64,000 nucleotides of DNA from Chlorokybus atmophyticus (taxonomy: Eukaryota > Plantae > Mesostigma and Chlorokybus algae), in NCBI GenBank assembly GCA_009103225.1, contig RHPI01001037.1, positions 1,216,916-1,280,915 of the forward strand, written 5' to 3'. Of the stretch, positions 4,736 to 48,982 are shown piece by piece. Each line of letters opens with the position of its first letter. The first letter of the stretch is position 1. Below the pieces are notes generated by a model that was not told the origin of the DNA, did not search any database, and saw only the letters and a list, made by a program, of their open reading frames with translations. The position numbers and the translations under genes were made by a program.

Positions 4736-6780
4736 ATGGCTGGCGGCGGCGGCGGTGGTCAAAGCGCGTCGTCTGCGCCGGTGGTATGCCCGAGGTGCCA
4801 CCGCCCTGGCCACGGCGCTGCGGACTGCACCGTCGGCGGCGGCGATGGCCTCCGCAACACCGCCGCCGCCGCCAATGACGCTCGCACCTCCGCCGGTAGG
4901 GATGAACAACAAGCAGCATGCCTGGTGCAGTCATACATGCATTCAACGCAGCAAAGGTTGGTGTTGTGAGGCAGTTGATGTAGACTTGGCTAATTTGATT
5001 GGAAGGCAGGATCGATCAATGATAGAGTGCACGTGTGGGAGATGTTTGATATCTGAAGCCCACAAGCGCCCTTGTCACTCCTGCACGCATGCACTTGTTG
5101 GTCTACAGCACTACTACTACTGCTTTGGTACATGTTGATGTTGATCACAACAAGCAGCAGCACACACCGCATTACCTGCATTACAGGCGGCGTGAGCATC
5201 CCCGAGGCGGGCTTCCCCGTACCGTCCCACTCACTCACAAGCCGCAGCAGCGATGGCGCTAACGCCTCTGTGGACCATGTGGTTGATGGATCTATGCTCG
5301 AGGGAGGCGGCCAAGTAAGTAAGCGTGCGTGTGTAAGAGCACACTCGCGCTTACAGCCACTCGCACAATCTTACAAAGCATGTGCGCTTGCACGCGCACG
5401 CGCACATACCCACCCACACCCACACATCTCCTCTCACAGATCCTCCGAGTGTCCACAGCTCTTGCAGCCATCACAACCAAGTCCTTGTCCATCCACCGCA
5501 TCCGCGCCGGCCGTTCCAAGCCCGGTCTCCGTCCCCAGCACTTGCTCGCCCTCCAGTCCGTGTGCAACATATGCAATGGTACTCTCTCCCACGCACACGT
5601 TGGCAGCGAGAGCATCACGCTGCGGCCGGGTGAGTTGAGGGTGGGTGAGTACGAAGCCGACACGCGCACGGCGGGGAGCTGCACGCTGCTGGCGCAGGCT
5701 GTCGTGCCGTGCTTGGTGAATGCGAGGGGGGAGAAGGGAGAGAGTGTGTTGGTGTGTAAAGGAGGGACGGATAACCCGGCGGCACCACCAGCGGACTATC
5801 TTGAACATGCGTTGGCGCCTGTACTCAGACGACACTTTGGCATCGACATCAGTATCATGCTAGAAAGGTGCATGCGCGCGTGTGTGCACGCGTGTACTTG
5901 TGCACATGGGTGCGCATGTGTCAAGTGAGCCATGTTGTAGTTGTTGGCTCATATCATTGATTGCATTTCTCTAGGAGGGGGTTTTATCCAAAGGGAGGGG
6001 GAAGGATGTCGGTGAGAGTGGGGGCGTTGCCTACAGGGAAGGCCTTGCCACCAATACAGGTAGGACCATGCTGTCTATCTAACCTCACAGGTATATAGTG
6101 TTCGTGTTCAATGTTGTGTCATTTTTCCATTTGACACGCCTGTTGTAGCTGATTGACCAAGGCAAGGTTGTGCGTGTTGAAGCGAGGGGCTTTGTGTCAG
6201 GCCGTCACAAGTTGGATGCACTGAAGGTCAGAGGAGACCATACAAGTAACAACAAGTGTCGGAGTGGTTTATCAAAGTTGATGTTGATGTTGATGTTGGG
6301 CACCCCTGACAGGGAGAGTTGAAGGAGGCGCAGCGGCTCCTGAGGCAACATCTCGACGAGGACGTGGACATCAACGACATCACTGCCGTGCAGGAGACGA
6401 GCGGTGTGTCCGCCATCGGCGACGGGATGGGTCTGACGCTTATTGCTCACACGGACACCAACTGCATACTCGCATCCAACGCTTCCGCCACCGACACAAA
6501 CACTCCTGGGAGACATGCCGCAGAGGAGTTGCTGCGTGTCCTTGACACCGGCGCAACCGTTGATACATACATGCAGGACCAACTTATCATCTTCATGGCG
6601 CTGGCTTGCGGGACCTCCGTGCTGAATGTTGGGAGAGACGAACCCACGCTACACGCGCGCACGGCCGCAGCTGTTGCAAATGCACTCACTGGTGCCAAGT
6701 GTGATTTCGCACGGGATGAGAGCAGAGGAGCCGTGTGGATGCTCACTTGCGAGGGCGTCGGATGGACAAGACCAACATAA
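4736..6780 (+). CDS. RTCA: RNA 3'-terminal phosphate cyclase with N-terminal CCHC zinc knuckle
   Basis: join(4736..4895,5187..5314,5440..5867,5975..6059,6149..6226,6313..6780), phases consistent. Motifs VDGSMLEGGGQ|ILRVSTAL, IRAGRSKPGLRPQHL, KGGTDNPAAPPADY, RRGFYPKGGG, VDTYMQDQLIIFMALA, TLHART (catalytic His position, so RTCA rather than RCL1). Head-to-head with METTL18, 181 bp between ATGs. Confidence 0.92.
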
Positions 6781-6905
6781 TGTGTATGGTATCGTGCATG
6801 CGTGTGTGTACATTGATGCAGTGGATGTTCTCGCTGCTTGCTGTACAAGTGTGTATATATAAAGCGTGCGTGTATGGTCCGTACACCCACCCCAACATGA
6901 GTCTA

Positions 6906-9733
6906 TCAACCGCGTGTGACGCGGCGTCGTGTGCGTTTCCGCCCCGAGCCCGGCCGCTTGTTGGTGTTGTTGTTACTGCCATCTTGCATGAAGAACGGTT
7001 CGTCGAACTGCGACCGCATCCACGCTATAAGCTTCTCCTTCTCGTTGGCATCCTTATCCTTACTACTCTTATCCCTCTCAATGAGCAGCGACAGCACGTC
7101 AGGCTGCTCGTTGGTCCCCTTTCGCATCGACCGTGTTGACAAAGAAGCGCGTGTGCTACGCGTGCTCCCACTCGGACCCGAGTGCGAAGGTGAGCGTGGG
7201 GAAGGAGCCCCCCCGTCCGTGATGAAACCGCTGTCGCGGTCGTCATCGTCGCTCAAACCGCCGCCGCCGCCGCCAGCCTCGGAACCGCTTGTGAAGATCA
7301 TCTCGGATAAGGGAGCCTTCACGCCCTCGCCGCGACGCGTGTTCAACTCCTGAAGTGAGAGATTGAGTTCCAGGTCAGGGTCAGGGTCAGGGTCAATCCA
7401 AGGTGACTGTCATTGCATAAGTGTTGAACACTTACACAAGTTGTTTCGTGATTGGAGGGACTCATTGCATCACACAGGCTAGATAGAGTGGTATGCCGAC
7501 ACACACATCCCCCTCACCTGTACGTCATGCGACATATCCACCAGTTCCCCTCTCAGTCTATCAAACTCCACGAGGTTATCCTCCACCGCCAGCAGCACGA
7601 GATAATAGTTCTCCACGGCAGCAGGGGTGACTTCCTCGAGGTCGGGCAGCTCCAGCGGCTGCTGCCGACGCCAGACGTCGCTCTCGACGCGGTCCACGCC
7701 CGCCGCGCCGCGACGAGGACCCTCCACCGCAGTGTGGCTGGAGGACTTGGGCTTCAACTCGGCCCATTTGAGACGGGAAGCGGCCTGGGAGAGGGGGGAG
7801 GTGAGGTGAGTGTGTGCGGGGGGGGGGGGTGGCATGTCGGCCCANNNNNNNNNNNNGGGGCACGTGTGCGTGTGTATGTGTGTGTCACAGGCTGTGACAC
7901 ACAGTGACCCACGCACACGTGCCGTGTGTGCACACAGGCATGCACGCATCACTGCATACGTGCACAGTTGCGCTCCCATACTTGTGTGTGCGCATCTGAA
8001 AGATTACATGCATGCATCCTTGCCTTGGATTCAATGGCAGACGCTTGGTGGTTTGTCACGATTATCCCAACAAGTAAATTCATGAAGACAAAGGCTCCCA
8101 GTACGATGAACGACACGCAATACGCGTACGCCGCCGCAAAGTATCCTGCGTCCTGCAGCTCGTGGAAGATGTCCACCCATCCGTCTTGAGTCAGAAACAC
8201 GAACAGGGTGAACATGCTCGAGGGGAGGTCGCCAAAGTCACGCGGGGCCGCCCGAGCAAAGATTGACACGCCCACCACGGACCATATGAACATGATCAGG
8301 GCTAACAGGATCAAGATGTTGCTCATGTCTGCCACGGAGAGAGCGATGGTCTGAACCACAGTCTGTAAGCCGGATAGGAACTTGATGCTGCGAAGGGCAC
8401 GCAGAGCACGCAACACACGCAGTATCCGCAACGCCTGGGGAGGTGAGATTAATGTTGGTCAATGCACACGTTACCAACACCAATGTTCGGGTGATACTAG
8501 TACAGATAGGGAGGTAGTATTCACACCAAATGGTGTCGAATGCAGCTTTGAACAGCGTTCTCTGATACAGCACCACAGTGTGTAGTTGTTGTGTGGCACG
8601 GTGGACGTGTGGCAAGTTGTGTGCGTGTGCCATGTTGATCATCACCTTCCCGCCGCCAAGGGATGTGATAAGTTCTCCAAGTATGGACGCCGCAACCACA
8701 ACGAAATCAAACACGTTCCACGGCGAGTCCCAGAACCCTCTGAAGTCATGCACCCACTTGAGTCCTAGCTCTATGCCAAACACGGCCACGAAGGCCGTAT
8801 CCAACGCAGCGAACGTGTTGGGATGCTCGCGCGCCAGTGTCGCATTGGTTTGCAACCCGATCACGACCGTGTTGGCGGCGATGACGGCGAGGATAGAGTG
8901 GTGGAAGAGCTTGGATTCGAGGAGTCGACCGGCCAGGTCGCGACGGACGTAACCCTCAAAAGGACGACCGGTGTCCTCGTCGACAACACCCGTGAAAGCG
9001 ATGCTGCGGAGGTATGCTGCCACGTTGACCTCACCCTCACCCTCACCCTCCTGCTCCTGCGCATCATCATCCTTGCTGGAGTGGACATCACCACCCTCCT
9101 CGAGCTCGTCCTTCCCGGCGTCAACGTAGCTGATGCCCTCGTGATGACGGTGGTACAGGTGCAAACCTTCACCGAAGAACTCCGCCCTTGACACCTTTGT
9201 CTGTGCCCCCGCGCATGCGCATGTTACATGCGGTCAAGGCAAGGCCCACACATGCGTAGCACACACGCATACGCACATGCATACACTAGCAACCGATACA
9301 TCAGGTATGTTTCCCACACTTCTGACCAAAGGAGCAGTGGTGTCACACTGATACATTGGGTGCCACATTGCAACAGGCTCAACATGCTGGTCGTTTACTT
9401 CTGCATCACACGCATATGCTCGCACGCGTGTACCTGTGAGACACACATGCACGCACGCACACATACACACACCCACACTCTTACCAGCAGGTCTGCAGCC
9501 GTGTCATTGATGTATGGTCCAGGCAGTGACACTTTGGGTCCTGTTGAGACGGCAGGGTCCAGCTCGGGTCGTGACCCGCGCCTCCTGGCGACTCCCACTC
9601 TGGGGGTGTATCCGGGACCCCATCCCGGCAGCTCCGACACGTACCCCCCGACCACCATCGGCGTCACTCTGTCTCTACTGCTGCTCCATCCTGTCTCGCC
9701 GCCACCGAGCCAGCCCCGTACCCTCGCCCACAT
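6906..9733 (-). CDS. CATSPER4: CatSper4-like single-domain (6TM) voltage-gated Ca2+ channel alpha subunit, about 640 aa
   Basis: complement join(9485..9733,8646..9200,8024..8434,7518..7784,6906..7349), all phase 0. S1-S3 FHHSILAVIAANTVVIGL / FGIELGLKW / FWDSPWNVFDFVVV; S4 LRILRVLRALRALRSI; pore TQDGWVDIF; S6 FIVLGAFVFMNLLVGIIVTN; C-terminal ENYYLVLLAVEDNLVEFDRLRGEL. The TQDGWVD filter and the C-terminal helix match my recall of CatSper4. Start codon choice uncertain. Confidence 0.8.
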
Positions 9734-10351
9734 CGCCAACCCTGCCACGGAGGCCGCCGCCGGTTACGGGGAGTGACGTAACGGGAGGGGTTTTTGCTAG
9801 GCGTGCATTACGATACGATTACGTCATCGGAGCTGCGATACGGTAGGTCACGTGACATGTGTGAGTGAGTTGCAAAACACAACTGGAAATAGTAGTGTTG
9901 AGATTTTTAGGGTTAGGGTTTGTTGGTCGACACAGGCATACGTGGCGCTCTCCCAGCGCACTGCCCCTGGCCTGGCCTGCCCTGAGCTATCTGGCCTGGA
10001 CACATGTTACTTGGTAATATTAAGGAAAAGGAGGACTGATCAAGGGGCGCAGGGATTGCCTACTGGCAGCGTTTCAAGTGTTGAGTGTACTGGGGAAAGC
10101 AATGCGTGAACGTGTCAGAGTGTGCGAGTGCTACATACTTACTCTGTGTTTAATGTGTACATAGTTGTCGAGCCTGCAGTGCTACTTGTAGGAGTGGCTT
10201 GATCGCTTGATCAGATCCACAGGTACACAGGAGCGCGCACAAGACACACATGTGTCTGTGCGCGCACATGGGTCGCAGGAAGAGAAACCCAATATGTACA
10301 TATTGTGAGGACTGAGTCGACTCATCACCCCAAAGGGAAGGGGGATCCACC
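9734..10351. promoter_or_regulatory. Putative bidirectional promoter between the CatSper-like gene and the dynein heavy chain
   Basis: 618 bp between divergent ATGs. Contains GTGACGTAAC (9774-9783), TTACGTCAT (9819-9827), palindrome GTCACGTGAC (9847-9856) and telo-box-like TTTTAGGGTTAGGGTTT (about 9905-9921). Confidence 0.5.
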
Positions 10352-13300
10352 ATGCCTTACAGGGGCGGCTCTTCCTTCTTCAACAGCAGCGAAGCCAGCA
10401 GCGATGGCGACGCCACCCCAACCCACACCGAGCGCAACGTGTGGTTCCCGCGCATAGCCTCCGGTGCCGAGGCGCCCAAGCAACACTTACCACCCGTGGA
10501 TGGGAGTGTTGGTCTTGGAGGAGCTTACAACAATGGTGGCAGTGCGTGGAGGACGAGGAAGGCGGCGTGGTGGAAGGAGGCGGCGGCGAGAGCGGGAGGG
10601 AAAAGTGAGTGGTTGTGTGAAGGTGGTGTTTGCACAACATGTTGCATGTTGTTGTTGATGATGTCATTGTCACCATTGCTTGCAGTGTGGGTGGTGGTTG
10701 TGCTCATCACCGCCTTTGCTGTCTCGATGTGGCAATAACTACCATCAACCAACATGTTGTTGTCAGCGTTGTCGCATGCTAGTATAGGCATACAACCACA
10801 TCAACACAGCACTATTAGCTGCATGCACGTGTAGAAGCATGCTATGCATCCCCCACGCGTTGACCCAGACCTTGCTGCTGTAATAAAACATCCAGCTACA
10901 CTGTCGCTGCCATACACAACACACACACACACACTTCTCCACGCAGGTCCACTCGACGACCTCTTCGCCATCCGCACGGAGGACATCGACGCGTACGAGC
11001 TCCGTTCAACTCCCGCTTCCAAGCGTCTCCGCGGCCACTTCTCCTCCCTCCCTTCCATATCCCCATCTCACCCTCCCTCCTCCTCCCCGCGCGCGGCCAC
11101 ACACCTCCTACCTCCCCTCAACACCACCACCAACAACAACGAGAACCACAACACAACCAACTATAATAACAACAATCCTGCTTCGCCAAGTAAAGGAGGC
11201 AATGGGTCCCTTTATCTCCACCCGCAAGTGCCTGTGAGGACGCTGCTGATGCTAAGTCCCAAGGCGTCGCCTAAGGGGACAGCAGCAGGGAAGAGTTTTA
11301 GGGGTGTCACAACAACAACAACAACAACAGTTGGTGGTGGTGGTGTGTCAAGCCCAAAGTCTCCTGCTACTACTGCTCCTCCTCCTCCTCCACCTGCGGC
11401 TGCGCCGTTAGAGGGGGTGACAGACCCCGTGGAGGCTGAGGCTATTGCACGCATACGGTGAGGGGGCAGGCTGTGTGATGTATGCATGCAGTATGTTGCA
11501 ACGATGGTAGCAGGCGTTGAGGGTGATTGTGTGTATGTGCTGCTTGTGGTGGTGGTGCAGAACTGGCGATGATGTGGTGGAGTTTTACGCTCAGTACGGG
11601 CAGGAGAGCGCGGTCAAGTTCTTCTACTGCATCAGGTGTGATGAGTCTCTTTCATTGCCAGGCACACAACCTACATGCACACTATGCCACGCATGTAACT
11701 ACGTTAGCTTGTTCACACACAACATGCAATTCATAGAAATTGTGTCTCTCTTGTCCAGGGCTGATACGGGCTTGGACTTCCGTCCTTATGACTTGGCAGT
11801 GGTCCCGCGTGAGGCCTTAAGCGCCCACGCCGAGCACTTCACTCTATCCGCTTCAGGCGTGGTTCGCGTGGTCCCTCCGCAACACAACAACAACAACACC
11901 CCCCACAACCCCCACCACCACACGCCCACGAGCAGCGAGTTCACCCCTCTCGGCGAGTGGGTCCGCGAGAAGTCTCTTTTCGGCGTGCTGAGACGCATGC
12001 GCTTCTTCAAGCACTACCTCGTCGACAAGATGTTCCGCATATGGCACAAGGGTGTGAGACATAAACTCTATTGTCAGGTGAGAAATAGACTCACGAGGAG
12101 GTTGTTCCTGGCGAAACCAACGTTCTGCGGGGCGCTAATGGAGCTGAGAGGACTCGTACATGATTTGTCGGAGATACGAATGATGCATGTCAACCAGAAT
12201 CACCTGTACAGCCTCGACGAGTTTGCCGAACTGCAACAGTCCCACAGGTAGCGCACAGCAGACTACACACATGCACAACAACTCAGTTACGCATGCATGT
12301 GCATCGATGCAACGTGCGTGTCTGCGTGGCACGGTGTGACACGCCCAGAAACGCATGCATGCACCTTTACACAACACATATGCGCGTATACGCACACCAC
12401 CCCTTCATCGTGTACGTGTGTGTCTGGGCACAGGACGCACAAGGCGACACCTGCTCTTGAGGCTGCTGTGGAGCGTATCCAATCCGGTCTCGAGCGCATC
12501 TGCCGCGAAGTATCCAAGCAAGCTCGCTTATACAAAGAGTCCATCCGCGACGCCAGCGAGTTGGAAGATGTGACCGGCGTGAACCTCCTGCAGGTGAACT
12601 TAACGTTGTTGTATACGCTCTTGTGTACACATAGCTCACACCTCACACCTCCTTTAGGGTCAGGCTGCGGACAAGACCCGCAGCATGGTTAGCATCAAGC
12701 ACCAGAAGATGGAGCGCGCTCGCACGTACCGTCGCGTGACGGAGGAGGCCAAGATGTTGGGCGAGTTCATCCGTCTCGCGGACTACATGTTGGTTGAAGG
12801 ACTCGTCGCACGCGCTATCGGCACGGCAGAGGAGTTGCTCGCTTTACTCGAGTCGCCACGCGTGGCGAGTGACAAAGCCAGTAAGGGAGTGTTTCTCACC
12901 ATGGTGTCGTTCGCGGAAGAGGGACTCGCATTCTCACCTACTGAGGTGGATGTGTTGGCTGTACTCAACAACAACCTACTGGAAGGGATGATCTCCACAA
13001 TACAAGGTGTACCGAGACTCCTCTTCATGCGCTCTTTCGTGCAATACTTTGATGCAAAGTTGTCAGGACTCAACCCTGTGGCCATCATACGTGCAACGGA
13101 TTACTTCGCTCAGCTGCGTGTACGTGTGGACAAAGTGGTGAGTCAGGACTTTGCAGAGGCGTTGCAGTATGCGCAGATATTCGAAGAGAATCGCGACATA
13201 TACACGTTCGGGAAGACGTGGCGTCCCGAGGCTCACGCCGCGGAGAAACACACCCTCAAGGAGTTCAGGGATGATCTGTACAAACAAAAGGAGTGGCGGA

Positions 13301-16300
13301 ATGACTTGGAGAGGATGAAGATCGGGGCCGTCATCGGCGTGTTACACGTCGACTCCAAGTCACTCCGCAACTCACTTGTACCGATCACACTACGTACACT
13401 CGAGTCAATAAAGGGGTTACTCCTCCAAAGCGCACGTGAAGAAACTGTCAAAGCTCTCAGCTCGTTCCAATCCAGAATCAAACTACTCCAAGAGCGACCT
13501 CTTGCCTTAGACGAGTTCGTCACCTTCATGGAGGCTGTGGACGAGACCGTATCAAAGAGACGTCTTGCCCTCATGGAGTCAGCTGTTGTGGACGACATGT
13601 ATGATCTACTCACCTCCTTTGAGGTCAAGGCGCCCACCGCGGATCAAGTGAAGCTGGATGACCTGCATGATGCGGTCGCGGCGTATCAGGCGGCCGTCGT
13701 GAATGCGGAAGAGTATATCACAGATAGGAAGGGGGGGATGATGAACACGCTGGATAAACAGATTACGGCGATCAACGAGGAGCTACTGTCGTTGCTTGGT
13801 ATGTGGTATATGCATCGTTCAGTTCACGTGTACCATGTGGTGTTGGGTACAGCTGTGTGTCAAGCTGTACCCAACATCAACTGGGTTGCACTGCTGACCT
13901 GGTCAGTCCCAAAGCTTTGAACACACACAAGCTTCATGTTGGGTATGCGAGTCACGAGGCGTGTGTGTGTCACACATACGCACTGGACGTGACACAACAA
14001 GTCTAACACACCCACTCACTCCAGGTTCTCTTCACTCGGGTCCTTACGTGGAGCCGGACTCCCTCCCTTCCGCCACGGCCGCCGAGCTCCACGCCGTGCA
14101 GGAAGGTTTAGGCGCCTTAGGCTCACGCGCGGGCGAGTGCCAACGCTACCAGCGCTTGTTCGGCATGCCCGTGGACGACTTCGCCAACTTGGCTCTGACT
14201 CAAAAAGAGTGTACTGCACGCCTAAGCGTATGGAGTGCTTTATCAGAGTTCATCGATAAAGCGCAAGCGTGGAAGACGGGTCCGTTACAGAAGTTGAGGG
14301 TGGTGGAGATACAAGCTGATGTGGAGCAGCACGCCAAAGATGCGTACAGGATGGGTAAAGCCAACAAGGAGGACCGCGTGGTGTATCGTTTGAAGGATGC
14401 CATTGATGAGTTCAAGACAGTGATGCCATTGATAGAAGAATTAGCCAATGAGGCTCTCGGGTCCCGTCACTGGCAGGAGATTTTCCGACTCGTAAACCAA
14501 CATTACGAGCCGGGTCAACCTTTCAGTGTGACAGATCTCCAGGCTTATGGCATAGCCAACCACATGGATGCTGTGGCTGCCATCTCACTCAATGCGAGTA
14601 AAGAGCATTCGCTTGAAAGAGCACTTGATAAGATGAGTGGAGACTGGTCTGGGTTGGAGTTCAGAGTGGTGGCGTACAAAGACACGGGGACATTTGTCAT
14701 GGGCGGCGTGGATGAAGTGCAAGCTTTGTTAGATGATCAGATAGTGAAAATCCAGTCCATGAGAGCGAGTCCTTTCATTAAACCATTTGAAGCCCGTGCG
14801 AGTACGTGGGAGGATATGCTCCAGACTTTGCAGGATTTGGTGGATAATTGGTTGGCTTGTCAGGCGACATGGCAATATTTGGAGCCAATCTTTGGGTCTG
14901 CGGATATATTGAAACAGATGCCTGAAGAAGGGGAGCAGTTCAGAACTGTGGACACCATATGGCGAGACATGATGGCCAAGACCAACAAGGCACCCGCGTG
15001 TATCACCATTGCGCGCGATAAGGAGAGGCTCGCCAGGCTGAAAGAGGCTAATAATCTATTGGATGCTATTCAGAAGGGGTTGGCGAGCTATTTAGAGCAG
15101 AAGCGAGTGGCTTTCCCGAGATTCTTCTTCTTATCGAATGATGAGATGTTGGAGATCCTTTCTGAAACAAAGGACCCGACGCGCGTGCAACCCCACTTGA
15201 AGAAATGCTTTGAAGGCATTGACTCGCTTCGCTTCGAAGAGAAAGCTGATACGCAGTTCATCACAGCTATTGTGTCTGCTGAGGGTGAAGCTGTGGACTT
15301 AAAGGACAACATTAAGCCTGCTGCTGCTAATGGTGCAGTAGAGAAGTGGCTGTTACTCGTCGAGTCCGGCATGGTTGAGTGCATTCAGAATCAATGTGAG
15401 TTATCAGTAGCTGCTTATGCGACTGTTCCCAGAGAAGAGTGGGTGTTGGCCTGGCCGGGACAAGTCGTCCTTGTCGTGTCGGCCATCTACTGGACCCAAC
15501 AAGTCACCGCAGCAGTCAACGCCGGCAACAATGTTGTGTCGGACTATGAACGGGAATGCACAGACTCCTTAGGGAGAATTGTGTCTCTTGTTAGAGGAGA
15601 CTTGACCAAACTCGCAAGAGCAACATTATCTGCGCTTGTTGTGATGGACGTGCACGCGAGGGATGTTGTGGCGATGCTGTCTAGAGAAGGTGTGGGTGGT
15701 GTGGGTGGCGAGAGTGGCTTCGCGTGGCAGAGTCAACTGAGGATGTATTGGGAGAACGGGACGTGTATCGTCAGGATGATGAACGCGTCGGTGGAGTACG
15801 GGTACGAGTATCTGGGCAACTCGTCGAGACTGGTCATCACGCCGCTCACGGATAGGTGCTATCGGACGCTGATGGGAGCCATACATCTGAACCTGGGAGG
15901 AGCACCGGAGGGACCTGCAGGAACAGGTGCGTGCTGTGATGTGGGTGGGGGTGGGTGGGTGGTGGGATGAATGCGTGCGTGCGCGCGTGCACGTGCGCGC
16001 ACGTGTGCGTGTGCGTGTGCGCGTGAGAGTGTGTACGCGTAAATGCATGGGCATGCGTGTGTGCATCTGCATTCGTATGCATTGCGCACCTATGTGTGCG
16101 TGTGCGCGCATGCGTGTGGTAATAGATGTGTGCGCGTTTGTGCGTGTACATGTTGTAACACTGATGACACCCATATTATCCAGGCAAGACCGAGACGACC
16201 AAGGACTTAGCCAAGGCCCTCGCCCGCCAATGCGTCGTCTTCAACTGCTCCGACTCCCTCGACTACCTCGCCATGGCCAAGTTCTTCAAAGGCTTAGCCG

Positions 16301-19300
16301 CCTCCGGCGCGTGGGCTTGTTTCGACGAGTTCAACCGCATCGACCTCGAAGTCCTATCCGTCGTGGCACAGCAAGTATTAGAAATCCAAATCGCCGTCCA
16401 ACAGAAGGTCAAGACGTTCACCTTTGAAGGGACTGAGTTGACTCTCAAACCGACGTGCAACGTGTTTATTACCATGAACCCGGGTTATGCCGGGCGATCG
16501 GAGTTGCCGGATAACTTGAAGGCGTTGTTTAGAACGGTGGCTATGATGGTGCCGGATTATGCGATGATCAGTGAGATTATACTGTATTCGAATGGGTATT
16601 TACAGGCGAGGGATTGTGCTAGGAAGATCGTGGCGACGTATAGACTGTGCTCGGAGCAACTGAGCTCGCAGGATCATTATGATTATGGAATGAGAGCCGT
16701 CATGGCGGTACTGCGGGCAGCTGGTATGTTGTGGTTGTGGTTGTGGTTGTGGTTGTGGTTCTCGTGTTTGCGGGTGGATAGTGTATGCGTGTGCGTGCAT
16801 GTGTGTGTGTACACACTGTGTTGCTCACCTGAGTTATGTCTCTCATTCCTCCTTCAGCCAACCTGAAGCGTCGTTTCCCCTCCGAGGACGAGTACGTCCT
16901 TATGCTCCGTTCCATCATCGACGTCAACCTCTGCAAGTTCCTGTCCCACGACGTCCCCCTCTTCAACGGCATCGTCAAGGACCTGTTCCCCGGGGTCGTG
17001 CTGCCCTCCCCGGACTACGTCAACCTCGACAACGCCATGAGGGCGAACTGTAAGAAGATGAATCTGCAGCCGACGGACTACTTCCTGACAAAGGTGAGTA
17101 GAGATGAGAGTAACACAGTAGCACACTAGCACACTACTATGGCAATTGCACCTCTGAGCATGCAAGGTTTGAGTTGTGCGTGTGTGTGACGCACGCACGC
17201 AAGCACCCATGCACGCACATGCGCATACGCATGAAAGTGTGTGTGTGTGCGCGCGCGTGCATGTATGAGGTTGCATGAACACTCTCGCACACACCCATAT
17301 GCGTGCGCGTGCGCACACACACACACATACACTCTCACTTGCATACACATCACGATACGGGATTTGAGTATACGCACAGAGTCACGATACGCGTGTACGT
17401 TCACACCAACAACCAAGTGTTGCACACCCCACTCACCCTCCCTCCTCCAGGTGATCCAGCTCTACGAGATGATCGTGGTCCGCCACGGCCTGATGCTCGT
17501 GGGCCTCCCGTTCTCCGGCAAGACCTCCGCCTCCCGCGTCCTCGCCTCCTCGCTGTCGGACCTCGCCGACGCCGGACTCAACAACGAGAACAGGGTCAAG
17601 GTCACGGTCATCAATCCGAAGGGAGTCACCATGGGGCAGCTGTATGGACAGAACGACCCGGCCACGCAGGAGTGGTGCGATGGGGTGCTGGCGGTCAAGT
17701 TTAGGGCGTTCGCGAGTGAACAGGTGAGAGGGGTGGGGTGGGTGGGTGTGCATGCGTGCACGCATGCATGCACTCGCAATGGGAAAAATCCAGCAATGAT
17801 GAGTAAGCATGCGTGCAAACGTGACTGTGCTTGAGAGAGTGAGTGAGTGCGCGCGCGCGCGCGCGTGTGTGCGTGTATGTGTGTGCATGCATGCGCGTGT
17901 ATGTGTAATTGTGTGTATGTGAGTGAGTGAGTGAGCAGGCGTGTGGGTATGCATACCTGCATGGGTGCATAACACACGTACTCACTGATGTATGTGTGGC
18001 AGTCTCCTGCGAGGAAGTGGTTGATCCTCGACGGTCCCGTCGACGCCATTTGGATCGAGAACATGAACACCGTCCTCGACGACAACAAGAAGCTCTGTCT
18101 CCCCAACAGCGAGATCATCCAGATGTCCAGCACGATGAACATGATCTTCGAGGTGGGTGACCTCGCCGTGGCTTCACCCGCCACGGTCTCACGCTGCGGG
18201 ATGGTGTATCTGGAACCACATCAACTGGGGTGGAGACCACTCGTGCAGTCATGGCTAGCAACATTCCCAACGTGTGCTGATGAACATACGCGGAGACTGG
18301 ATGCGTTGTTCGAGTGGTTGCTGCCGGCGGCGTCGAGGTTTGTGAGGACAGAGGTGAAGGAGATATCGCCCACGTTGGATGCCAACATTGCACAGTCACT
18401 CATGCGCATGTTCGCCGCACTATACCCGGAGCTGTTGTTGGATGAATCCACCAACACAACAACAAGTGACCCACAAGCCATTACCCAACGTGTGGATGCG
18501 ACCTTCGTGTTTGCGCTCACGTGGTCCGCGGGCGCCACGGGTGACGTGGCGGGTAGGAAGGCGTGGGACGTGTTTGTGAGGAGGATGTGCATAGGAGGGG
18601 CTGCGCCAGAAGGGTATGAGATGTACGTCCCCAACAAACACGCCACGCTCGTCGCGCCGATGGTACCGGACGATAACGGGGCACTCGTACATGACTACTT
18701 CTGGGACAAAGACGCGGGTACGGGAGTGTTGTGTGTGATGATTTGCACTCGTTTATGGTATGTTTTGTTGACAGTGAAGCTGTTGGAGTTGCACTTGACG
18801 CTTAGCATGTCTGCCCACATGCGTGCGTGCGTGCGTGCGCACACGCATATACTTATACGCAGCGCACGTCTGCTTGTATGTACGCGCGTGTATGTGTAAC
18901 AACTGCTAGCATGCACACACAAGCCTCCATACGACTCGCACGACAACTCTACATTCCCACTTCAGGTGCATGGAAGACGTGGACATCCACCATAGCTCCC
19001 GTCGACATCCCCTCCGACGCCCAATTCAGCGAGATCATCATCCCCACGGCCGATTCCACCACATACACCTTCCTCCTCCAACTCGCTATCGGTCAGGAGA
19101 AGCCCATTCTGTTCGCGGGTGCGACGGGGACGGGCAAGTCCGTCTACATCAAGAGGCACCTCATGTCGGGACTGGCCAAGGAGAAGTACAGTACGGTCGC
19201 GGTGGCATTCTCGGCGAGGACGTCGGCGAATATGACGCAGGAGCAGATCGATGGGAAACTGGATAAGAGAAGGAAAGGGGTGTTTGGGCCACCAGCTGGC

Positions 19301-22300
19301 AAAGTGAGTGTCGGTGCCCCCTTTTGTGATATGCCTACCCACCCACACACGTGCCCCTGCGCACCCACCCTCTCCACACATACACGCACGCGCGCACATA
19401 CCCACCCACCCACACCCACACCCACATACACGCACACGCACGCACGCACGCACGCACTCTTACACATGCACGCACGCAATACGCAAACATCACGTGTGCT
19501 CCAGCACACCGCAATTGTACTAACCCGTCCCCTGCCCGTCCCCTGTCTCAGAAATGCGTGATCTTCGTGGACGACCTCAACATGCCCCAACTCGAGCCGT
19601 ACGGCGCCCAGCCCCCGATCGAGTTGCTTCGTCAGTTCATGGACTACGGCGGCTGGTACGCCCGCGACAACTCCTTCCGCGAGATGGTCGACGTCAACTT
19701 CGTCGCGGCAATGGGACCACCGGGAGGAGGAAGAAACAACGTCACGAGCAGATACTTGAGACACTTCAACACGGTGGCCGTGTCACAAGTGGCGGATACA
19801 TCACTGTTGACAATATTCACATCCATACTCAACTGGCACTTGAATGCCAATCCATTCCCAACAGAAGTGCGTGCCTTGACTTCTGCGGTGACAGCGGCAA
19901 CCTTAGAGGTGTACTCTACAAGTGTGGCCACACTTCTTCCAACTCCAACCAAGTCTCACTACATCTTCAACTTGAGGGACTTTGCTCGTGTGGTTCAGGG
20001 GGTGATGTTGCATCACCACGCTTTACTGCCGGCCGAGTCTGGCGTACAAGCGGCGAAGCAGTTTGCGCGCTTGTGGACGCACGAAGTGTTGCGCGTGTTT
20101 TATGATCGCCTCACGGATGATAAGGATAGAAAATGGCTGCTTGATACAGTGAAAACACTCACGAAGAAGCACTTCTTCTACCTGTTTGATGAGCTGTTTG
20201 GACACCTCAAAGAGGGGGAGAATGGTAGTGATACAGTGGACATGAATGCGATGAGGAGGTGTTTCTTCGGTGCGTACATGGACGAGGACCAAGATGCGAG
20301 TAAATACGGTGAGGTTCAAGACATAACTAAACTCCTCGCTGCGATGGAAGAGTACCTAAAAGACTACAACGGCACGAGCAAGCGTCCGATGAACTTGGCA
20401 ATCTTCCTATTTGCGGCCGAGCACGTGTCGCGCATATGCCGCTTACTCCTCCAACCGGGTGGCCACATGTTGTTGGTTGGCGTGGGGGGGTCGGGGAGAC
20501 AATCCCTCACGCGCCTCGCATCCCACATGTGTGGCATGCAAGTCCTCCAGGTGGAGATATCAAAGTCATATGGCATGATAGAGTGGAGAGAGGACTTGAA
20601 GAGAATGTTGAGAGTGGCGGGAGAGGCCGCGGGAAGCCCCGCCGTGTTTCTGTTCAGTGATACGCAGATCAAGAACGAGGCGTTCGTGGAGGATATCAAC
20701 AATGTGCTCAATGCGGGAGAGGTACCCAACATGTTTGCCAACGATGAGAAGGCCATCATCATAGAGAACGTACGCACCATCGCAGCCAAAGCAGGACGAA
20801 AACTCGAGACACAGGTTAGCACTGTGGTTGTGGTTGTACTTGTGTCTCAATGTTGTCTATCATATATAACATCCTGATACATGTGTGCATTGCAGTTGGA
20901 GCTCTGGGCTTTCTTTGTTGAGCGTTGCCGTGCGCGTCTCCACATCGTCATCTGCATGTCTCCTGTCGGCGACGCCTTCCGCGAGCGCCTGCGACAATAC
21001 CCGTCGCTCGTCAACTGCTGCACAATCGACTGGTTCCAAGTGAGTGGGACCAAGAGATACATGTGTGTTGGTGATACATGTTGGTGATACATGTCTCTCA
21101 CTGTTCTTAACGAGTTAGTAGATAGGCCTCAGCCTCATGTGCACCTTGGTCCAGCAAGCTTCCGCTAATACGTACAACGCATATATATTTTACGTCATTC
21201 AGTATTACTGTATAGTGCATGACTTGACACAACTCTTGCATTGCAGGAGTGGCCGACGGATGCGCTCGAGGCCGTTGCTCAGAAATTCTTGAAGGAGGTT
21301 GATCTCGAGTCCAGCGTGCGTGAGGGCATGGTCCGCATGTGCAAGACTTTCCACGACACGGTTCGCGACTTCAGCGGCCGTTTCTACTCCGAGCTCGGCC
21401 GTCGCAACTACGTCACTCCCACATCCTACCTGGAACTCATATCCACATTCCAGACTTTACTCACAGCCAAACGCAAGGAAGTGATGAAGCTGAAACAGAG
21501 ATACGAGACGGGGTTGCAGAAGTTAGCCAGTAGTGCGGAGGAGGTGGCAGGCATGTCTCAGGAGCTTGTTGAGCTAAAGCCCAAGTTGATTGAGACTGTT
21601 GGTGAAGTGGAGGAGCTCATGCGCAAGATTGATAGAGAGAAGATTGAAGTGGTTGAGCCTAAAAAGGCTGTTGTGCAAGCCGATGAAGCCGTGGCTGCGG
21701 CTCAGGCTGCTGAAGCTAAGGCTATCAAAGATGATTGTGAGAGTGCTTTAGCTGAAGCCATGCCTGCATTGAAAGAAGCTCTCTCTGCTCTTGATACACT
21801 CAAGCCTGCGGATATCAACTATGTGAAGTCTCTCAAGAACCCGCCGAGTGCTGTGAAACTTGTCATGGAGGCCGTATGCGTCATCCTCGACGTGAAGCCC
21901 GTGAAGGTCCCGGACGGGTCCGGCAAGATGGCGTTTGACTATTGGAAGCCATCTGTTGCTTTACTCAATGATAAAGAGTTCCTCAACACGCTCAAGGCGT
22001 ATGACAAAGACAACATACCGCCCAAGATTATAGATAAGATACGGTCGACTTACCTGACAAATGAGGAGTTCACGCCGGAAAGAGCAGCCAACGCATCAGC
22101 TGCAGCAGAGGGACTGTGCAAGTGGGTGAATGCTATGTCGAAGTATGATGCTGTTGCAAAAGTTGTCGCACCAAAGCAAGCGCAGCTGAAGATTGCTGAA
22201 GCAGCCTATGAGAAGGTACACACGCACACGTACATGCAGTGAACTTTGTTGTGTGTGTGTTGGTGCAATCTGACTTGCATATGTATAGGTTATGGTGGCG

Positions 22301-25300
22301 CTGAGGGCGAAGCAAGCTGAGCTCAAGGAGGTGCTTGACAAGCTTGCGGCCATGGAGGCGCAGCTGGCCGCCAACATGGCCAAGAAGGAGAACCTACAGC
22401 ACGAGGTGGGGATGTGCACCGTCAAGCTCGAGCGCGCGGAGAAGCTCATTGGCGGTCTCGGTGGAGAAAAGGTATGCATGCGTGTGTGTATGTGCGCACG
22501 TGACTGTCTTGGTGTGATGACTGAATTTTGTGTGTAATCAGGTGCGGTGGACCGAGGCAGCGCATGCGTTGGGACACGTGTACACCAACTTGACGGGAGA
22601 CATACTCGTCTCGGCGGGTGTGATCAGCTACCTCGGCGCGTTCACGGCGGGTTACCGTCAGGCCATCATCGAGAAGTGGGTCGCATTGTGCGAGGCCGAG
22701 AGCATCCCTCGTTCCCGTCTCTTCTCCCTCAACGCGGCATTGGGCAACCCCGTCGCCATCCGCGAGTGGCTCATCGCGGGTCTACCCAACGACTCGTTCT
22801 CCATAGACAACGCCATCGTGGTGGCCAACGCGCGAAGGTGGCCACTCATGATCGACCCGCAGGGACAGGCCAACAAGTGGGTGAAGAACATGGAGAGAGC
22901 CAACAACTTGCAGGTGATAAAGCTCAGCGAGGGAGGGGAGTATATACGCACACTCGAGAACGCCATACAGTTCGGCCTACCCGTGTTGTTGGAGAATGTT
23001 GGGGAGGAGCTCGACCCAACACTCGAGCCTTTACTACTTAAACAAGTGTTCAAGTCAGGAGGCATGAATTGTATAAGGCTTGGTGATGCAACGATAGAGT
23101 ACTCGTCGGACTTCCGCTTCTACATGACGACGAAGCTGAGGAACCCACACTACCTCCCTGAGACAGCTGTCAAAGTAACGCTACTCAACTTCATGATCAC
23201 AAAAGAGGGTCTGAGTGATCAGATGCTTGGTGTTGTTGTGGCGAAGGAGCGCCCGGACCTCGAGCAACAGAAGAATGAGCTTGTTGTCCAGGGCGCCGAG
23301 AACAAGCGCAAGCTCAAGGAGATTGAGGACAAGATCTTAGAGGTGTTGTCGGGCTCCGAGGGCAACATCCTCGAGGATGAGACCGCTATCAAGATCATAT
23401 CCGAGGCGAAGGTCCTCGGCAATGACATCAATGCCAAGCAGGCTTTGGCGGAGCAGACGGAGAAGGAGATTGATGCTGCCCGTGTCGGGTACAAGGCGGG
23501 AGGGGACTACGCCGCCACGCTCTTCTTTTGTATCTCTGACCTCGCCAACATCGAGCCGATGTATCAGTACTCTCTGCCATGGTTTGTCAACCTCTACGTG
23601 CTGTCCATCACGAACAGCGCCAAGGCCGAGGAGGTCGCTGACCGCCTGGCCAACATCAACACCCACTTCACCTTCTCCCTCTACTGCAACGTGTGCCGCA
23701 GCCTCTTTGAGAAAGACAAGCTGCTCTTTGCTTTCCTACTGTGCTCGCGCATCATGGAGACCCGCGGCGATATCGACCCCGCCGAGTGGATGTTCCTACT
23801 CACGGGCGGTATCGGCACGGGTGGGACCGGCTTCGGGACCAACCCGAACCCGGAATGGTTGATAGACAGGTCCTGGACTGAGCTTTGCCGGCTGTCGGTG
23901 CTATCCCCGGCCTTTACGGGACTCGCCGAGGGACTGAGAGACAACCCGAAAGAGTGGAAGGAGCTGTACGACAGCACCGAACCCCACCTCATGCCTTTAC
24001 CCGGGGGAGGAGCCAACAACAACAGCAAGTTCTCCTCCCTCAATCCAATCCAGAAGCTGCTTGTCCTAAGGTGTGTCAGGCCAGATAAGGTTGTCCCCGC
24101 CGTGCAGGACTTTGTTGTCCAGGCGATGGGGCGCAAGTTTGTCGAGCCTCCCGTGTTCGATCTGGGTTCGTGTTACGCCGACTCAAGCGCCACGTGCCCG
24201 TTGATATTCGTATTGTCTGTCGGTAGCGACCCGATGGCGGCTTTGCTCAAGTTCGCCGAGGCCAAAGGTATGATGGAGAGGATGCAGTTCATCTCTCTGG
24301 GGCAAGGTCAGGGCCCGAAAGCTTCAGCTCTCATCAAAGATGCTATTGAGGCCGGGTCGTGGGTCGTGTTGCAAAACTGTCACTTGGCGCCGTCGTGGAT
24401 GCCATCTCTGGAGAAGATATGCGAAGAGATCAATCCGGATACGGTCAATGTGGACTTTAGACTCTGGATGACGTCGTATCCGAGCCCAAAATTCCCCGTG
24501 GCGATCCTCCAGAACGGCGTGAAGATGACCAACGAGCCCCCGAAGGGCATCCGCGCCAACATCAAGAGGTCGTACGGGTTGGACCCCATCTCCAACGACG
24601 ACTTCTTTGAGGGTTCCACACGCCCGCATGTGTTCAAGAAACTGTTATTCGGTCTCACTTTCTTCCACGCCGTCGTGCAAGAGAGACGCAAGTTTGGGCC
24701 CCTCGGGTTCAACATCCCGTACGGGTTCGATGATGGCGACCTTCGCATCAGCGTGAGGCAGCTACGCATGTTGATAGATGAGGCCGAGGGCGGGACTCCC
24801 TTCGCCGCACTCAACTACATCACCTCCGAGTGCAACTACGGCGGGAGGGTCACCGACGACAAGGACAGGATACTCATCAAGGCTGTACTTGAGAACGTTT
24901 ACTGTGCTGAGATACTTGAACAAGACTACAAGTTTTCCAGTTCAGGGCTCTATTATGCTCCCGACGAGGGCGATAGAGACTCCTTCGTGCGGTACATTGA
25001 GAGTTTACCGATAGCGCCGCTGCCGGAGGCCTTTGGTCTCCACGCCAACGCGGACATCACCAAGGACGTGAGCGACACCAACATGATGTTTTCCTCCTTG
25101 CTGTCGATGTCGAGCACGAGCGGGTCCGGCAAGGGCGGCGCCGCTGCCAGCGCCGAGAGCGCCGTGGCCGGCGTGGTGAAGGATATCCTCGCCACGCTGC
25201 CTCCCGACTTTGATCTCGAGGCGGCCCTGAGACGCTTCCCCGTGTTGTACGAGGAGAGCATGAACACGATGTTGTGTCAGGAGATGGCTCGCTTCAACCG

Positions 25301-26003
25301 CCTCACCGCGTGCATACGCAAGTCTCTACAAAGCATAGAAAAAGCCCTGCAGGGCCTGGTTGTCATGTCATCAGACCTTGAGACGGCCTTCAGGAGTTTG
25401 ATCATCAATCAAGTCCCTGCCATGTGGGGGAAGTTGTCCTACCCGTCGTTGAAACCCCTCGGGTCCTATGTGAAGGACCTCCTCACGCGTCTGAGCATGC
25501 TGCAGACGTGGTACGAGCGCGGGTCAAAGCCGTCGGTGTTTTGGCTTTCGGGTTTCTTCTTCGCGCAGTCGTTCATGACGGCAGCGCTGCAAAACTACGC
25601 GCGTAAGAACAAGATCCCCATCGACATGGTCGGCTTTGACTTCGACATGTTGGGGATGGACCCCGACGCGTACAAGACGGGACCCGAGGACGGCGTGTAC
25701 ATCCGCGGCTTATATGTCGAGGGATGCGCGTGGGACGAGGAGAGAAAGATGTTGTGCGAGTCCAAGCCTAAAATACTCCACGTGCCCGCACCCGTTATGT
25801 GGCTCAAACCCGCACTCATAGTGGACTTCGCTAAATATCCACACTATGACTGCCCGCTGTACAGGACGGCCGAGCGAAAAGGCGTGTTGGCTACAACAGG
25901 ACACTCCACCAACTTTGTCATGAAGATACGCATGCCGACGGACCAGCCGCCAAGCCTGTGGACCATGAGGGGTGTGGCCATGCTGTGCGCGCTGTCGGAC
26001 TGA
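10352..26003 (+). CDS. Axonemal inner-arm (single-headed) dynein heavy chain
   Basis: About 17 exons: 10352-10604, 10947-11457, 11561-11635, 11759-12247, 12434-12593, 12658(or 12664)-13798, 14025-15926, 16184-16723, 16858-17093, 17451-17723, 18003-18717, 18966-19303, 19552-20814, 20896-21039, 21247-22215, 22289-22471, 22542-26003. P-loops GPAGT|GKT (AAA1), [25 protein letters not shown]; [36 protein letters not shown]; stalk/MTBD; C-terminal W..RGVAMLC. Confidence 0.97.

Positions 26004-48904: not shown

Positions 48905-48982
<78 letters not shown>

What the first reader, a model, noticed from the sequence alone, without database searches (positions are those of the whole stretch)
6906..9733. 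CatSper4-type calcium channel subunit in a green-plant-lineage genome
Seen: an intact 5-exon single-domain 6TM channel with an RxxR S4, a TQDGWVD filter and a C-terminal ENYYLVLLAVEDNL helix, contiguous with plant-type genes and sharing the intron style of its neighbours. Established: CatSper is the sperm-flagellar Ca2+ channel of animals, with patchy homologues in some flagellated protists, and is absent from flowering plants. Inference: a flagellated green alga keeps a CatSper-type flagellar Ca2+ system, possibly used in zoospores or gametes.
Basis: partly seen in the sequence, partly recalled or inferred. Interest (0 to 1): 0.85.

Follow-up and report, generated by a model that had tools for sequence, protein, structure and literature searches.

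The report
CatSper4 channel gene in Chlorokybus
This early-branching relative of land plants has an intact, spliced and transcribed gene for CatSper4, one of the four pore proteins of the calcium channel that steers animal sperm tails, so this subunit is much older than animals and fungi and survives in the green lineage.

Summary
On the minus strand, 9733-6906, five exons give an intact 641-aa single-domain 6TM channel. The N gap lies inside intron 3, a GC-AG intron, and a spliced contig of a public run joins exon 3 to exon 4 across it.

The protein is a CatSper4 orthologue. A profile of its 37 closest single-domain relatives scores it 510 bits, against 250-330 for mammalian CatSper4 and 216 or less for bacterial Nav. 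NCBI names many of those relatives CatSper4(-like). The same profile gives mouse CatSper4 327 bits, CatSper1 180, and CatSper2/3 below 177.

Its C-terminal helix domain matches one solved protein only, mouse CatSper4 (E 4e-11). In trees it sits inside a 100/100 CatSper4 clade, sister to Mesostigma (100/99).

Not shown here: flagellar location, heteromeric assembly and Ca2+ conductance. I could not fetch CatSper1-3 or EukCat sequences, so the tree lacks them.

The scan has already noted CatSper1-like, CatSper2, CatSper3, beta, epsilon, theta, tau and EFCAB9 candidates on other pieces of this genome. No paper I could search links CatSper to streptophyte algae. It is a new member of a known kind.

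The parts
6906..9733 (-). CatSper4-type channel gene: 5 exons, 641 aa.
   Evidence: Spliced ORF without stops. Spliced public contigs follow the model.
9485..9733 (-). Exon 1 (aa 1-83), a non-conserved N-terminal extension. The ATG at 9733 is the first in frame after an upstream stop.
   Evidence: The X1 contig covers 9486-9737. No Pfam match.
8646..9200 (-). Exon 2 (aa 84-268): acidic linker, conserved pre-S1 motif (9002-8913), S1 (8906-8847), S2 (8813-8751), S3 (8723-8667) and the first Lys of S4.
   Evidence: Pfam Ion_trans positions 2-82. Family alignment. Coordinates.
8024..8434 (-). Exon 3 (aa 269-405): the rest of S4, the S4-S5 linker and S5 (8380-8255), the pore helix and filter (8227-8165), and S6 (8137-8051).
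   Evidence: Pfam Ion_trans positions 94-235, E 1e-30. PDB hits.
8381..8648 (-). S4 voltage-sensor helix KALRILRVLRALRALRSIK, split by intron 2 (8645-8435).
   Evidence: It aligns with the RxxR-repeat S4 of non-mammalian CatSper4.
8177..8191 (-). Selectivity filter TQDGW (the TxDxW type).
   Evidence: Identical to the filter of mammalian CatSper4 rows in the alignment.
7785..8023 (-). Intron 3, with a GC donor and AG acceptor. It holds the assembly gap 7845-7856.
   Evidence: Junction context. The X1 contig skips 239 bases here, with 4 ambiguous letters that allow the GC..AG cut.
7518..7784 (-). Exon 4 (aa 406-494): linker and most of the CatSper4-specific C-terminal helical domain.
7341..7676 (-). 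C-terminal domain W..Q.P.E.PD...ENYYLVLLAVEDNLVEF...LN (aa 442-497), spanning intron 4 (7517-7350).
   Evidence: The A2 profile hits only mouse CatSper4 residues 335-390, E 4.3e-11. AlphaFold predicts a long helix at pLDDT 95-99.
6906..7349 (-). Exon 5 (aa 495-641 plus stop): a Ser/Gly/Arg-rich tail with the conserved distal motif PDVLSLLI (7103-7080).
   Evidence: The run X1 contig differs at 6988 (M615T) and 6999 (E611D).
9734..10843 (.). Divergent intergenic region shared with the axonemal dynein heavy chain gene. It contains TTTAGGGTTAGGGTTT at 9906-9921.
   Evidence: Sequence. Dynein domains downstream on the + strand. The region's limits are approximate.

Best explanation
The gene encodes the Chlorokybus orthologue of CatSper4, one of the four different pore-forming subunits of the CatSper calcium channel.

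Shown here:
- An intact, spliced, transcribed gene.
- A single voltage-sensor plus pore module.
- A TQDGW filter whose Asp is the residue type that makes CatSper and Cav pores Ca2+-selective.
- An S4 carrying five Arg and two Lys.
- Three motifs outside the channel core that are shared with animal CatSper4: a pre-S1 motif, a long C-terminal helix and a distal D-x-L-S motif.

Inferred:
- The protein joins CatSper1, 2 and 3 in a heterotetramer in the membrane of the biflagellate zoospore's flagella.
- It opens on depolarisation. It may be more steeply voltage-dependent than in mammals, where CatSper4 has lost most S4 charges.
- It admits Ca2+ that changes the flagellar beat.
- Its C-terminal helix docks a TMEM249/CatSper-theta-like partner. 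[quoted passage not shown]
- The gene was inherited vertically from an early eukaryotic ancestor.
For: Gene model and splicing.

Fold: Pfam Ion_trans on both halves.

Nearest relatives. An exhaustive search with the pore half finds 37 single-domain proteins at 43-67% identity. They come from Mesostigma, Cyanophora, Rhodelphis, Picozoa, metamonads, a malawimonad, an amoebozoan, zoosporic fungi, an ichthyosporean and animals. Many are named CatSper4(-like) by NCBI.

Profile scores. The A1 profile, built without the window protein, scores it 510 bits over residues 144-614. Mammalian CatSper4 scores 250-330 and BacNav 216 or less. Against PDB the same profile gives mouse CatSper4 327 bits and the CatSper4 core construct 247. 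BacNavs score 177-197, CatSper1 180, and CatSper2/3 are below 177.

Window pieces against PDB. Among CatSper chains, exon 2 hits only CatSper4 in the top 60. For exon 4, mouse CatSper4 is the best hit in the whole PDB.

C-terminal domain. Its profile hits mouse CatSper4 at E 4.3e-11 and nothing else below 0.1. It is modelled as a long helix at pLDDT 95-99.

Trees. The CatSper4 clade has 99* support in the quick tree and 100/100 in the careful tree. Window plus Mesostigma has 100/99. Opisthokonts, fungi and animals each form clades, which fits vertical descent.

Literature. The CATSPER4 C-terminal cytosolic domain binds CATSPER-theta, and beta pairs with CATSPER4 (PMC10523455). TxDxW is the CatSper pore motif (PMC3198926).

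Context. The gene lies head-to-head with an axonemal dynein heavy chain gene. Unverified scan notes list the other subunits in the same genome.
Against: - No CatSper1-3, EukCat or TPC sequence could be put in the tree. The subunit assignment therefore rests on profile scores against solved mouse chains and on the C-terminal domain.
- With the window's pore exon alone, mouse CatSper3 (73 bits), CatSper4 (72) and NaChBac (77) are tied. With S1-S3 alone a bacterial Nav scores above CatSper4 (53 against 40 bits).
- Nothing here shows protein, location, partners or current.
- The run that shows splicing is only guessed to be RNA, and it gives no information on life-cycle stage.
- The fully charged S4 differs from mammalian CatSper4.
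- Sexual reproduction is unknown in Chlorokybus, and zoospores are produced only occasionally (PMC7027972).
Confidence: 0.72

Rival explanations
1. It is a stand-alone homotetrameric voltage-gated Ca2+/cation channel. It would work like a bacterial Nav or a EukCat channel and would not be part of a CatSper complex, despite descending from the CatSper4 lineage.
For: The S4 is fully charged and the VSD countercharges are complete. BacNavs score as well as mouse CatSper3/4 against single exons. No CatSper outside animals has been studied functionally in the papers I could read.
Against: The CatSper4-specific cytosolic domain is conserved from this alga to mouse. In mouse this region serves assembly with theta (PMC10523455), and its conservation is hard to explain without a conserved partner. 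Scan notes report CatSper1-like, 2, 3, beta, epsilon, theta and EFCAB9 candidates in the genome (unverified).
Confidence: 0.14
2. It is a CatSper-family subunit but not the CatSper4 orthologue. It would be either another paralogue or a pre-duplication 'proto-CatSper' lineage that only resembles CatSper4.
For: CatSper1-3 are missing from my trees. The pore exon scores CatSper3 and CatSper4 equally.
Against: The family profile prefers mouse CatSper4 by about 150 bits over the full length and about 68 bits on the core alone, compared with CatSper1. CatSper2/3 score lower still. The C-terminal domain is found in CatSper4 only. Mammalian CatSper4 nests inside the animal part of the same clade.
Confidence: 0.06
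3. It is an expressed relic that no longer makes a working channel.
For: Chlorokybus is mostly non-motile, and most green plants appear to lack the gene. No other Viridiplantae appear among the labelled hits.
Against: The 641-codon ORF is intact across five exons. All conserved family positions are kept: filter, S4 charges and C-terminal motifs. The message is correctly spliced.
Confidence: 0.05
4. It comes from a contaminant or from recent horizontal transfer out of a protist or fungus.
For: The distribution in the green lineage is patchy.
Against: The closest relative is the Mesostigma protein (100/99), as expected for Chlorokybus, and both sit among other non-opisthokont lineages. The gene has four spliceosomal introns. 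It lies on one contig between a dynein gene and an RNA cyclase gene. An independent public run holds the spliced form.
Confidence: 0.03

Closest known systems
Animal CatSper4 (mouse CATSPER4, PDB 7eeb chain D; invertebrate 'CatSper4-like' proteins)
   Same: Single 6TM domain, TQDGW filter, pre-S1 motif, long C-terminal helix domain (E 4e-11 to the mouse protein) and distal D-x-L-S motif. It falls in the same clade in trees. Identity to sponge, cnidarian and echinoderm proteins is 51-55% in the pore half.
   Different: S4 keeps five Arg plus two Lys, whereas mammalian CatSper4 has two Arg. The protein is longer, with non-conserved N-terminal (about 140 aa) and C-terminal (about 140 aa) low-complexity extensions. 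The host is a photosynthetic streptophyte alga with zoospores rather than sperm.
Mesostigma viride protein Mv26005 (EukProt EP00899_P016346/5)
   Same: Sister in the tree (100/99): 67% identical in the pore half and 48% over 309 aligned columns. It has the same filter and C-terminal helix position.
   Different: The Mesostigma model lacks S1-S3 and is probably a truncated gene model. Its C-terminal motif is more diverged (ENLALAFAAVKSNL).
Bacterial voltage-gated sodium channels (NaChBac, NavMs, NavAb)
   Same: Single-domain 6TM architecture and a charged S4. Scores against single exons are similar to those of mouse CatSper3/4.
   Different: They fall outside the CatSper4 clade, which has a long stem (branch about 1.3-2.0) and 100/100 support. 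Their filter is TLESW/TLDDW-like rather than TQDGW. They lack the pre-S1 and CatSper4 C-terminal domains, are about 270 aa long, and are prokaryotic genes without introns.
EukCat single-domain channels of diatoms, haptophytes and dinoflagellates (Helliwell et al. 2019, PMC6509283)
   Same: [quoted passage not shown]
   Different: [quoted passage not shown] None appeared among the 37 closest single-domain relatives that I could label. I did not test them directly, because I had no EukCat sequence in hand.
Four-domain Cav/Nav channels (for example Chlamydomonas CAV2, T-type Cav3)
   Same: Homologous voltage-sensor and pore modules. The filter context is acidic, as in Cav domains.
   Different: Those have four linked domains; this protein has one. 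The best single domain of such channels scores about 124-148 bits against the family profile, compared with 510 for this protein.

Membership tests
CatSper4 (pore-forming CatSper subunit 4) | Single-domain 6TM voltage-gated-type architecture (S1-S4 sensor, S5-P-S6 pore) | tested here: met
   Pfam Ion_trans covers positions 2-82 on exon 2 and 94-235 on exon 3, out of 241. There is one domain only.
CatSper4 (pore-forming CatSper subunit 4) | TxDxW selectivity filter with the pore Asp | tested here: met
   TQDGW at aa 350-354, identical to mammalian CatSper4 rows. The motif definition comes from PMC3198926.
CatSper4 (pore-forming CatSper subunit 4) | Closer to CatSper4 than to CatSper1, 2 or 3 | tested here: met
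   The profile of the closest relatives scores mouse CatSper4 at 327 bits (core construct 247), CatSper1 at 180 and CatSper2/3 below 177. Window exons 2 and 4 hit only CatSper4 among CatSpers. The pore exon alone does not discriminate, and no tree with CatSper1-3 was possible.
CatSper4 (pore-forming CatSper subunit 4) | Monophyly with animal CatSper4 to the exclusion of BacNav and four-domain channel domains | tested here: met
   The careful IQ-TREE run (55 rows, 408 columns) gives the clade 100/100. The quick tree of 72 rows gives 99*.
CatSper4 (pore-forming CatSper subunit 4) | CatSper4-specific C-terminal cytosolic helical domain | tested here: met
   The A2 profile against PDB hits only 7eeb_D residues 335-390, E 4.3e-11; the next hit is at E 0.12. 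The helix is modelled at pLDDT 95-99. No Pfam family covers it.
CatSper4 (pore-forming CatSper subunit 4) | Reduced S4 charge (two Arg), as in mammalian CatSper4 | tested here: not met
   The window has K-R-R-R-R-R-K. Sponge, cnidarian, echinoderm, fungal and protist CatSper4 rows also keep four to six charges. This is therefore a mammalian derived trait, not a family-defining one.
CatSper complex | Co-occurrence with CatSper1-3 and auxiliary subunits (beta, gamma, delta/epsilon, theta, EFCAB9) in the same genome | not testable with these tools
   Only this 64-kb window was readable. Scan notes list CatSper1-like, 2, 3, beta, epsilon, theta, tau and EFCAB9 candidates on other pieces. I did not verify them.
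CatSper complex | Flagellar membrane location, heterotetramer formation and a Ca2+-selective current | not testable with these tools
   These need proteomics, imaging or electrophysiology.
Bacterial Nav (BacNav) | Groups with prokaryotic single-domain channels | tested here: not met
   It is separated from 10-12 BacNav rows by the 100/100 branch. BacNavs score 216 bits or less against the family profile, compared with 510.
EukCat (A-C) | Groups with diatom, haptophyte or dinoflagellate single-domain channels | not tested
   No EukCat sequence could be fetched by id. The published tree separates EukCats from CatSpers (PMC6509283).
Two-pore channel (TPC) half | Two tandem 6TM domains; best similarity to TPC | tested here: not met
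   There is one domain only. No TPC chain is among the 60 best PDB matches of the window exons or of the family profile.

The most novel reading that the evidence does not exclude
Chlorokybus and Mesostigma retain a complete CatSper complex inherited from near the root of eukaryotes. It would work in the flagella of zoospores or flagellate cells, with a CatSper4 that is still a true voltage sensor. All other green plants, including those with swimming sperm, would have lost it. CatSper would then be an ancestral ciliary Ca2+ channel of eukaryotes rather than an invention of the animal-fungal-apusozoan lineage.
Probability: 0.5. Interest if true: 0.75.

Novelty: new member of a known kind. Interest (0 to 1): 0.6.

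Why it matters
[quoted passage not shown] Plant-focused reviews note that it is absent from land plants such as Arabidopsis (PMC5406480).

An intact, expressed CatSper4 in the earliest-branching streptophytes changes that picture. It groups by descent with glaucophyte, Rhodelphis, picozoan, metamonad, malawimonad and amoebozoan orthologues. That places the subunit close to the last common ancestor of eukaryotes and implies repeated loss, including loss within green plants.

The gene also offers a non-animal, culturable system in which to study CatSper. The mammalian channel has resisted functional expression in heterologous systems (PMC5362262). In addition, the family alignment shows that the weakly charged S4 of mammalian CatSper4 is derived.

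Tried and rejected
**Searches that gave blanks for technical reasons**
- The search for homologous proteins with the exon-2 frame gave only 8 bacterial Navs. Its length window (182-579 aa) excludes a 641-aa protein, so the blank says nothing.
- The same tool with the Mesostigma protein returned only that protein. Low-complexity words from its tail filled the candidate list, so this too says nothing about other green algae.

**Sequences I could not get**
- I could not obtain CatSper1-3, EukCat or TPC sequences as ids. PDB chains are not stored as proteins, and I did not type sequences. The trees therefore lack them.
- As a substitute I used profile scores against solved mouse CatSper chains.

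**Searches that did not discriminate**
- Atlas feature searches with exon 3 and exon 2 gave only generic Ion_trans clusters.

**Papers and supplements not held**
- Cai, Wang and Clapham 2014 (PMC4169769) is not held.
- The supplement of Helliwell 2019 is not held.
- The distribution maps in PMC10523455 and PMC12638846 are figures and cannot be read. I cannot say which non-animal species those papers list.

**Unresolved**
- An unlabelled clade of CatSper4-like proteins (P0027, P0045, P0030, P0104) traces only to SRA run numbers, with no organism given.

**Readings rejected**
- BacNav-like, by the tree and profile scores.
- Four-domain channel fragment, because there is a single domain, a start and stop, and the message is spliced.
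- Frame break at the gap, because the gap is intronic.

Full report
**1. The observation**

Six-frame translation of 6850-9800 shows the coding frames on the minus strand. Five exons join into a 1926-nt ORF of 641 codons: 9733-9485, 9200-8646, 8434-8024, 7784-7518 and 7349-6906. All introns are phase 0. Introns 1, 2 and 4 begin GT and end AG. Intron 3 (8023-7785) begins GCAAGG and ends CAG, so it is a GC-AG intron.

The assembly gap at 7845-7856 lies inside intron 3. Whether the letters on each side are continuous therefore does not affect the protein.

I tested this with public data. One run (X1) holds 59% of the sampled words of 7857-9800, about the exon share of that stretch. Its contigs were laid on 6700-9900.
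- A 4357-nt contig lies on 8022-8432, 7517-7782 and 6700-7348. The two joints skip 239 and 168 bases, exactly introns 3 and 4. The 4 ambiguous letters at the first joint allow the GC..AG cut.
- A second contig ends at 8645 with 12 loose letters, GTATCCGCAACG. These equal 8422-8433, the start of exon 3, so intron 2 is also removed.
- Other contigs cover exon 2 (8817-9190), and one covers exon 1 up to 9737.

The run is only guessed to be RNA, but spliced contigs can only come from RNA. The contig differs from the window at 6988 and 6999. These give M615T and E611D in the non-conserved tail.

**2. What the protein is**

Pfam Ion_trans matches exon 2 (profile 2-82: S1-S3) and exon 3 (profile 94-235: S4-S6). 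It is one voltage-sensor plus pore module.

S4 reads KALRILRVLRALRALRSIK: five Arg flanked by two Lys at three-residue spacing. The filter is TQDGW.

Against solved structures the single exons do not discriminate well.
- The pore exon scores NaChBac 77 bits, mouse CatSper3 73, CatSper4 72 and CatSper1 61. Four-domain channels score higher only by adding their four domains.
- S1-S3 scores NavMs 53 and CatSper4 40. No other CatSper chain is listed.
Its best hit in the whole PDB is mouse CatSper4 residues 334-374, although at E 0.18.

**3. Relatives**

An exhaustive HMMER search of 1.84 billion cluster representatives with the pore exon returned, besides four-domain channels, 37 single-domain proteins at 43-67% identity. 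Exact look-ups and a profile search gave their origins:
- Mesostigma viride, at 67% the closest
- Cyanophora paradoxa, Rhodelphis marinus, Picozoa
- the metamonads Paratrimastix, Carpediemonas and Aduncisulcus
- Gefionella, Ceratiomyxa
- chytrids, Allomyces, Catenaria, Gonapodya, Anaeromyces, Rozella
- Chromosphaera
- sponges, a ctenophore, cnidarians, echinoderms, amphioxus, tunicates, annelids, collembolans and mammals

NCBI names most of the animal proteins, and several fungal and metamonad ones, 'cation channel sperm-associated protein 4(-like)'.

**4. Tests of subunit identity**

- *Family profile against the window protein.* A profile of the 37 proteins (A1, without the window protein) scores the 641-aa model 510 bits in one stretch, residues 144-614. 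Mammalian CatSper4 scores 250-330, bacterial Navs 216 or less, and the best single domain of a four-domain channel 124.
- *Family profile against PDB.* The same profile gives mouse CatSper4 327 bits over chain residues 17-431. A 250-aa CatSper4 core construct scores 247, bacterial Navs 177-197, and mouse CatSper1 180. CatSper2 and 3 are below the last listed score of 177.
- *Motifs outside the core.* The alignment shows three shared motifs: a pre-S1 motif (AF..VVDED...F..Y....L.G.L.ES), a C-terminal domain (W..Q.P.E.PD......ENY.L.L.A.E.NL.EF..L...L......LN) and a distal D-x-L-S motif.
- *C-terminal domain profile.* A profile of the C-terminal domain from the window and 24 non-mammalian relatives (A2) hits one solved protein, mouse CatSper4 residues 335-390, at E 4.3e-11. 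The next hit is at E 0.12, and no CatSper1-3 chain appears. No Pfam family covers this domain. AlphaFold2 on A2 models it as a short helix followed by a helix of at least 35 residues at pLDDT 95-99.

**5. Trees**

I built trees from the CatSper4-like proteins, 10-12 bacterial Navs, and domains II and IV of three or four four-domain channels. Two runs were made:
- quick tree: 72 rows, 404 columns
- careful IQ-TREE: 55 rows, 408 columns, LG+C20+F+G4 by PMSF

The CatSper4-like proteins, including the mammalian ones, form one clade on a long stem. Support is 99* in the quick tree and 100/100 in the careful tree. The window protein is sister to the Mesostigma protein (98* and 100/99).

Fungi (97/89), animals (98/87) and opisthokonts (90/98) each form clades, and mammals nest within animals. 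This is the pattern of vertical descent. The sister relation to Mesostigma independently agrees with the scan's statement that the genome is Chlorokybus.

Rows left out of the careful tree: the unlabelled metagenome and SRA proteins, one long four-domain protein, two long bacterial rows and one mammal.

**6. Limits**

I could not fetch CatSper1-3, EukCat or TPC sequences, so the tree cannot show the four-way CatSper split. Assignment to subunit 4 rests on the tests in section 4. Two word-index searches were uninformative for technical reasons.

**7. How it most likely works**

By orthology, the protein is one of four different subunits around a Ca2+-selective pore whose filter Asp ring comes from the TxDxW motifs (PMC3198926).

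In mouse, CATSPER-beta pairs with CATSPER4. [quoted passage not shown] That domain is not resolved in the atomic structure (PMC10523455). It is conserved from this alga to mouse, which suggests it has a conserved partner. The scan notes a TMEM249 candidate and a beta candidate elsewhere in this genome (unverified).

The full S4 suggests that CatSper4 was originally a real voltage sensor. The two-Arg S4 of mammals looks derived, because sponge, cnidarian, echinoderm, fungal and protist rows keep the charges.

Chlorokybus makes biflagellate scaly zoospores, and sex is unknown in it (PMC7027972). The gene lies head-to-head with an axonemal dynein heavy chain gene. A role in zoospore flagellar Ca2+ entry is the natural inference, but it is untested.

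**8. Novelty**

No held paper contains both 'CatSper' and 'Chlorokybus'. CatSper co-occurs with streptophyte terms in only one unrelated paper. Papers that pair CatSper with Chlamydomonas use it for comparison and do not, by their titles and abstracts, report a green-algal homologue.

[quoted passage not shown] Others place it before the unikont/bikont split (PMC5362262, PMC5406480).

Databases already hold unlabelled or auto-labelled family members from Mesostigma, Cyanophora and metamonads. This scan had already noted the other subunits of this genome.

The finding is therefore a new member of a known family in an unexpected lineage. It is one of the four pore subunits that a complete CatSper channel would need in this alga.

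Noticed in passing
window 10844-26003 (+): A large axonemal dynein heavy chain gene lies head-to-head with the channel gene. Domains found: DHC_N2, AAA_6, AAA_9, AAA_lid_11, Dynein_heavy and Dynein_C. The two flagellar genes may share the roughly 1.1-kb divergent promoter region.
   Followed up: partly
window 9906-9921: A plant-telomere-type repeat, TTTAGGGTTAGGGTTT (telo-box-like), sits in the intergenic region between the channel gene and the dynein gene.
   Followed up: no
window 5329-5928 (+) and the stretch below 6700: An RNA 3'-terminal phosphate cyclase (RTC) gene converges on the channel gene. The spliced X1 contig runs on for about 3 kb beyond 6700. Either the two messages overlap at their 3' ends or the assembler merged them.
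   Followed up: partly
alignment (P0237, P0238 against all other rows): Mammalian CatSper4 has lost most S4 charges, keeping two Arg. Sponge, cnidarian, echinoderm, fungal, metamonad, glaucophyte and streptophyte orthologues keep four to seven. The weak sensor therefore looks like a late, derived trait.
   Followed up: partly
P0027, P0045, P0030, P0104 (loci L001, L002): These form a well-supported (100*) clade of CatSper4-like proteins known only from SRA assemblies and JGI metagenomes. They sit among the non-opisthokont lineages, and the organism is unknown.
   Followed up: partly
P0251 (1111 aa), P0198 (1339 aa), P0240 (1453 aa): These are long proteins that match the CatSper4-family profile. 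One (P0251) also carries EF-hand Pfam domains, which suggests possible channel and Ca2+-sensor fusions in uncultured eukaryotes.
   Followed up: no
P0010/P0159 (Mesostigma viride): The public Mesostigma gene model starts inside S2/S3, with S4 at residue 43. It is probably truncated at the N-terminus.
   Followed up: no
window 30001-32000 and 48001-50000: Two stretches have markedly lower G+C (0.44 and 0.40) than the rest of the window (0.50-0.59).
   Followed up: no
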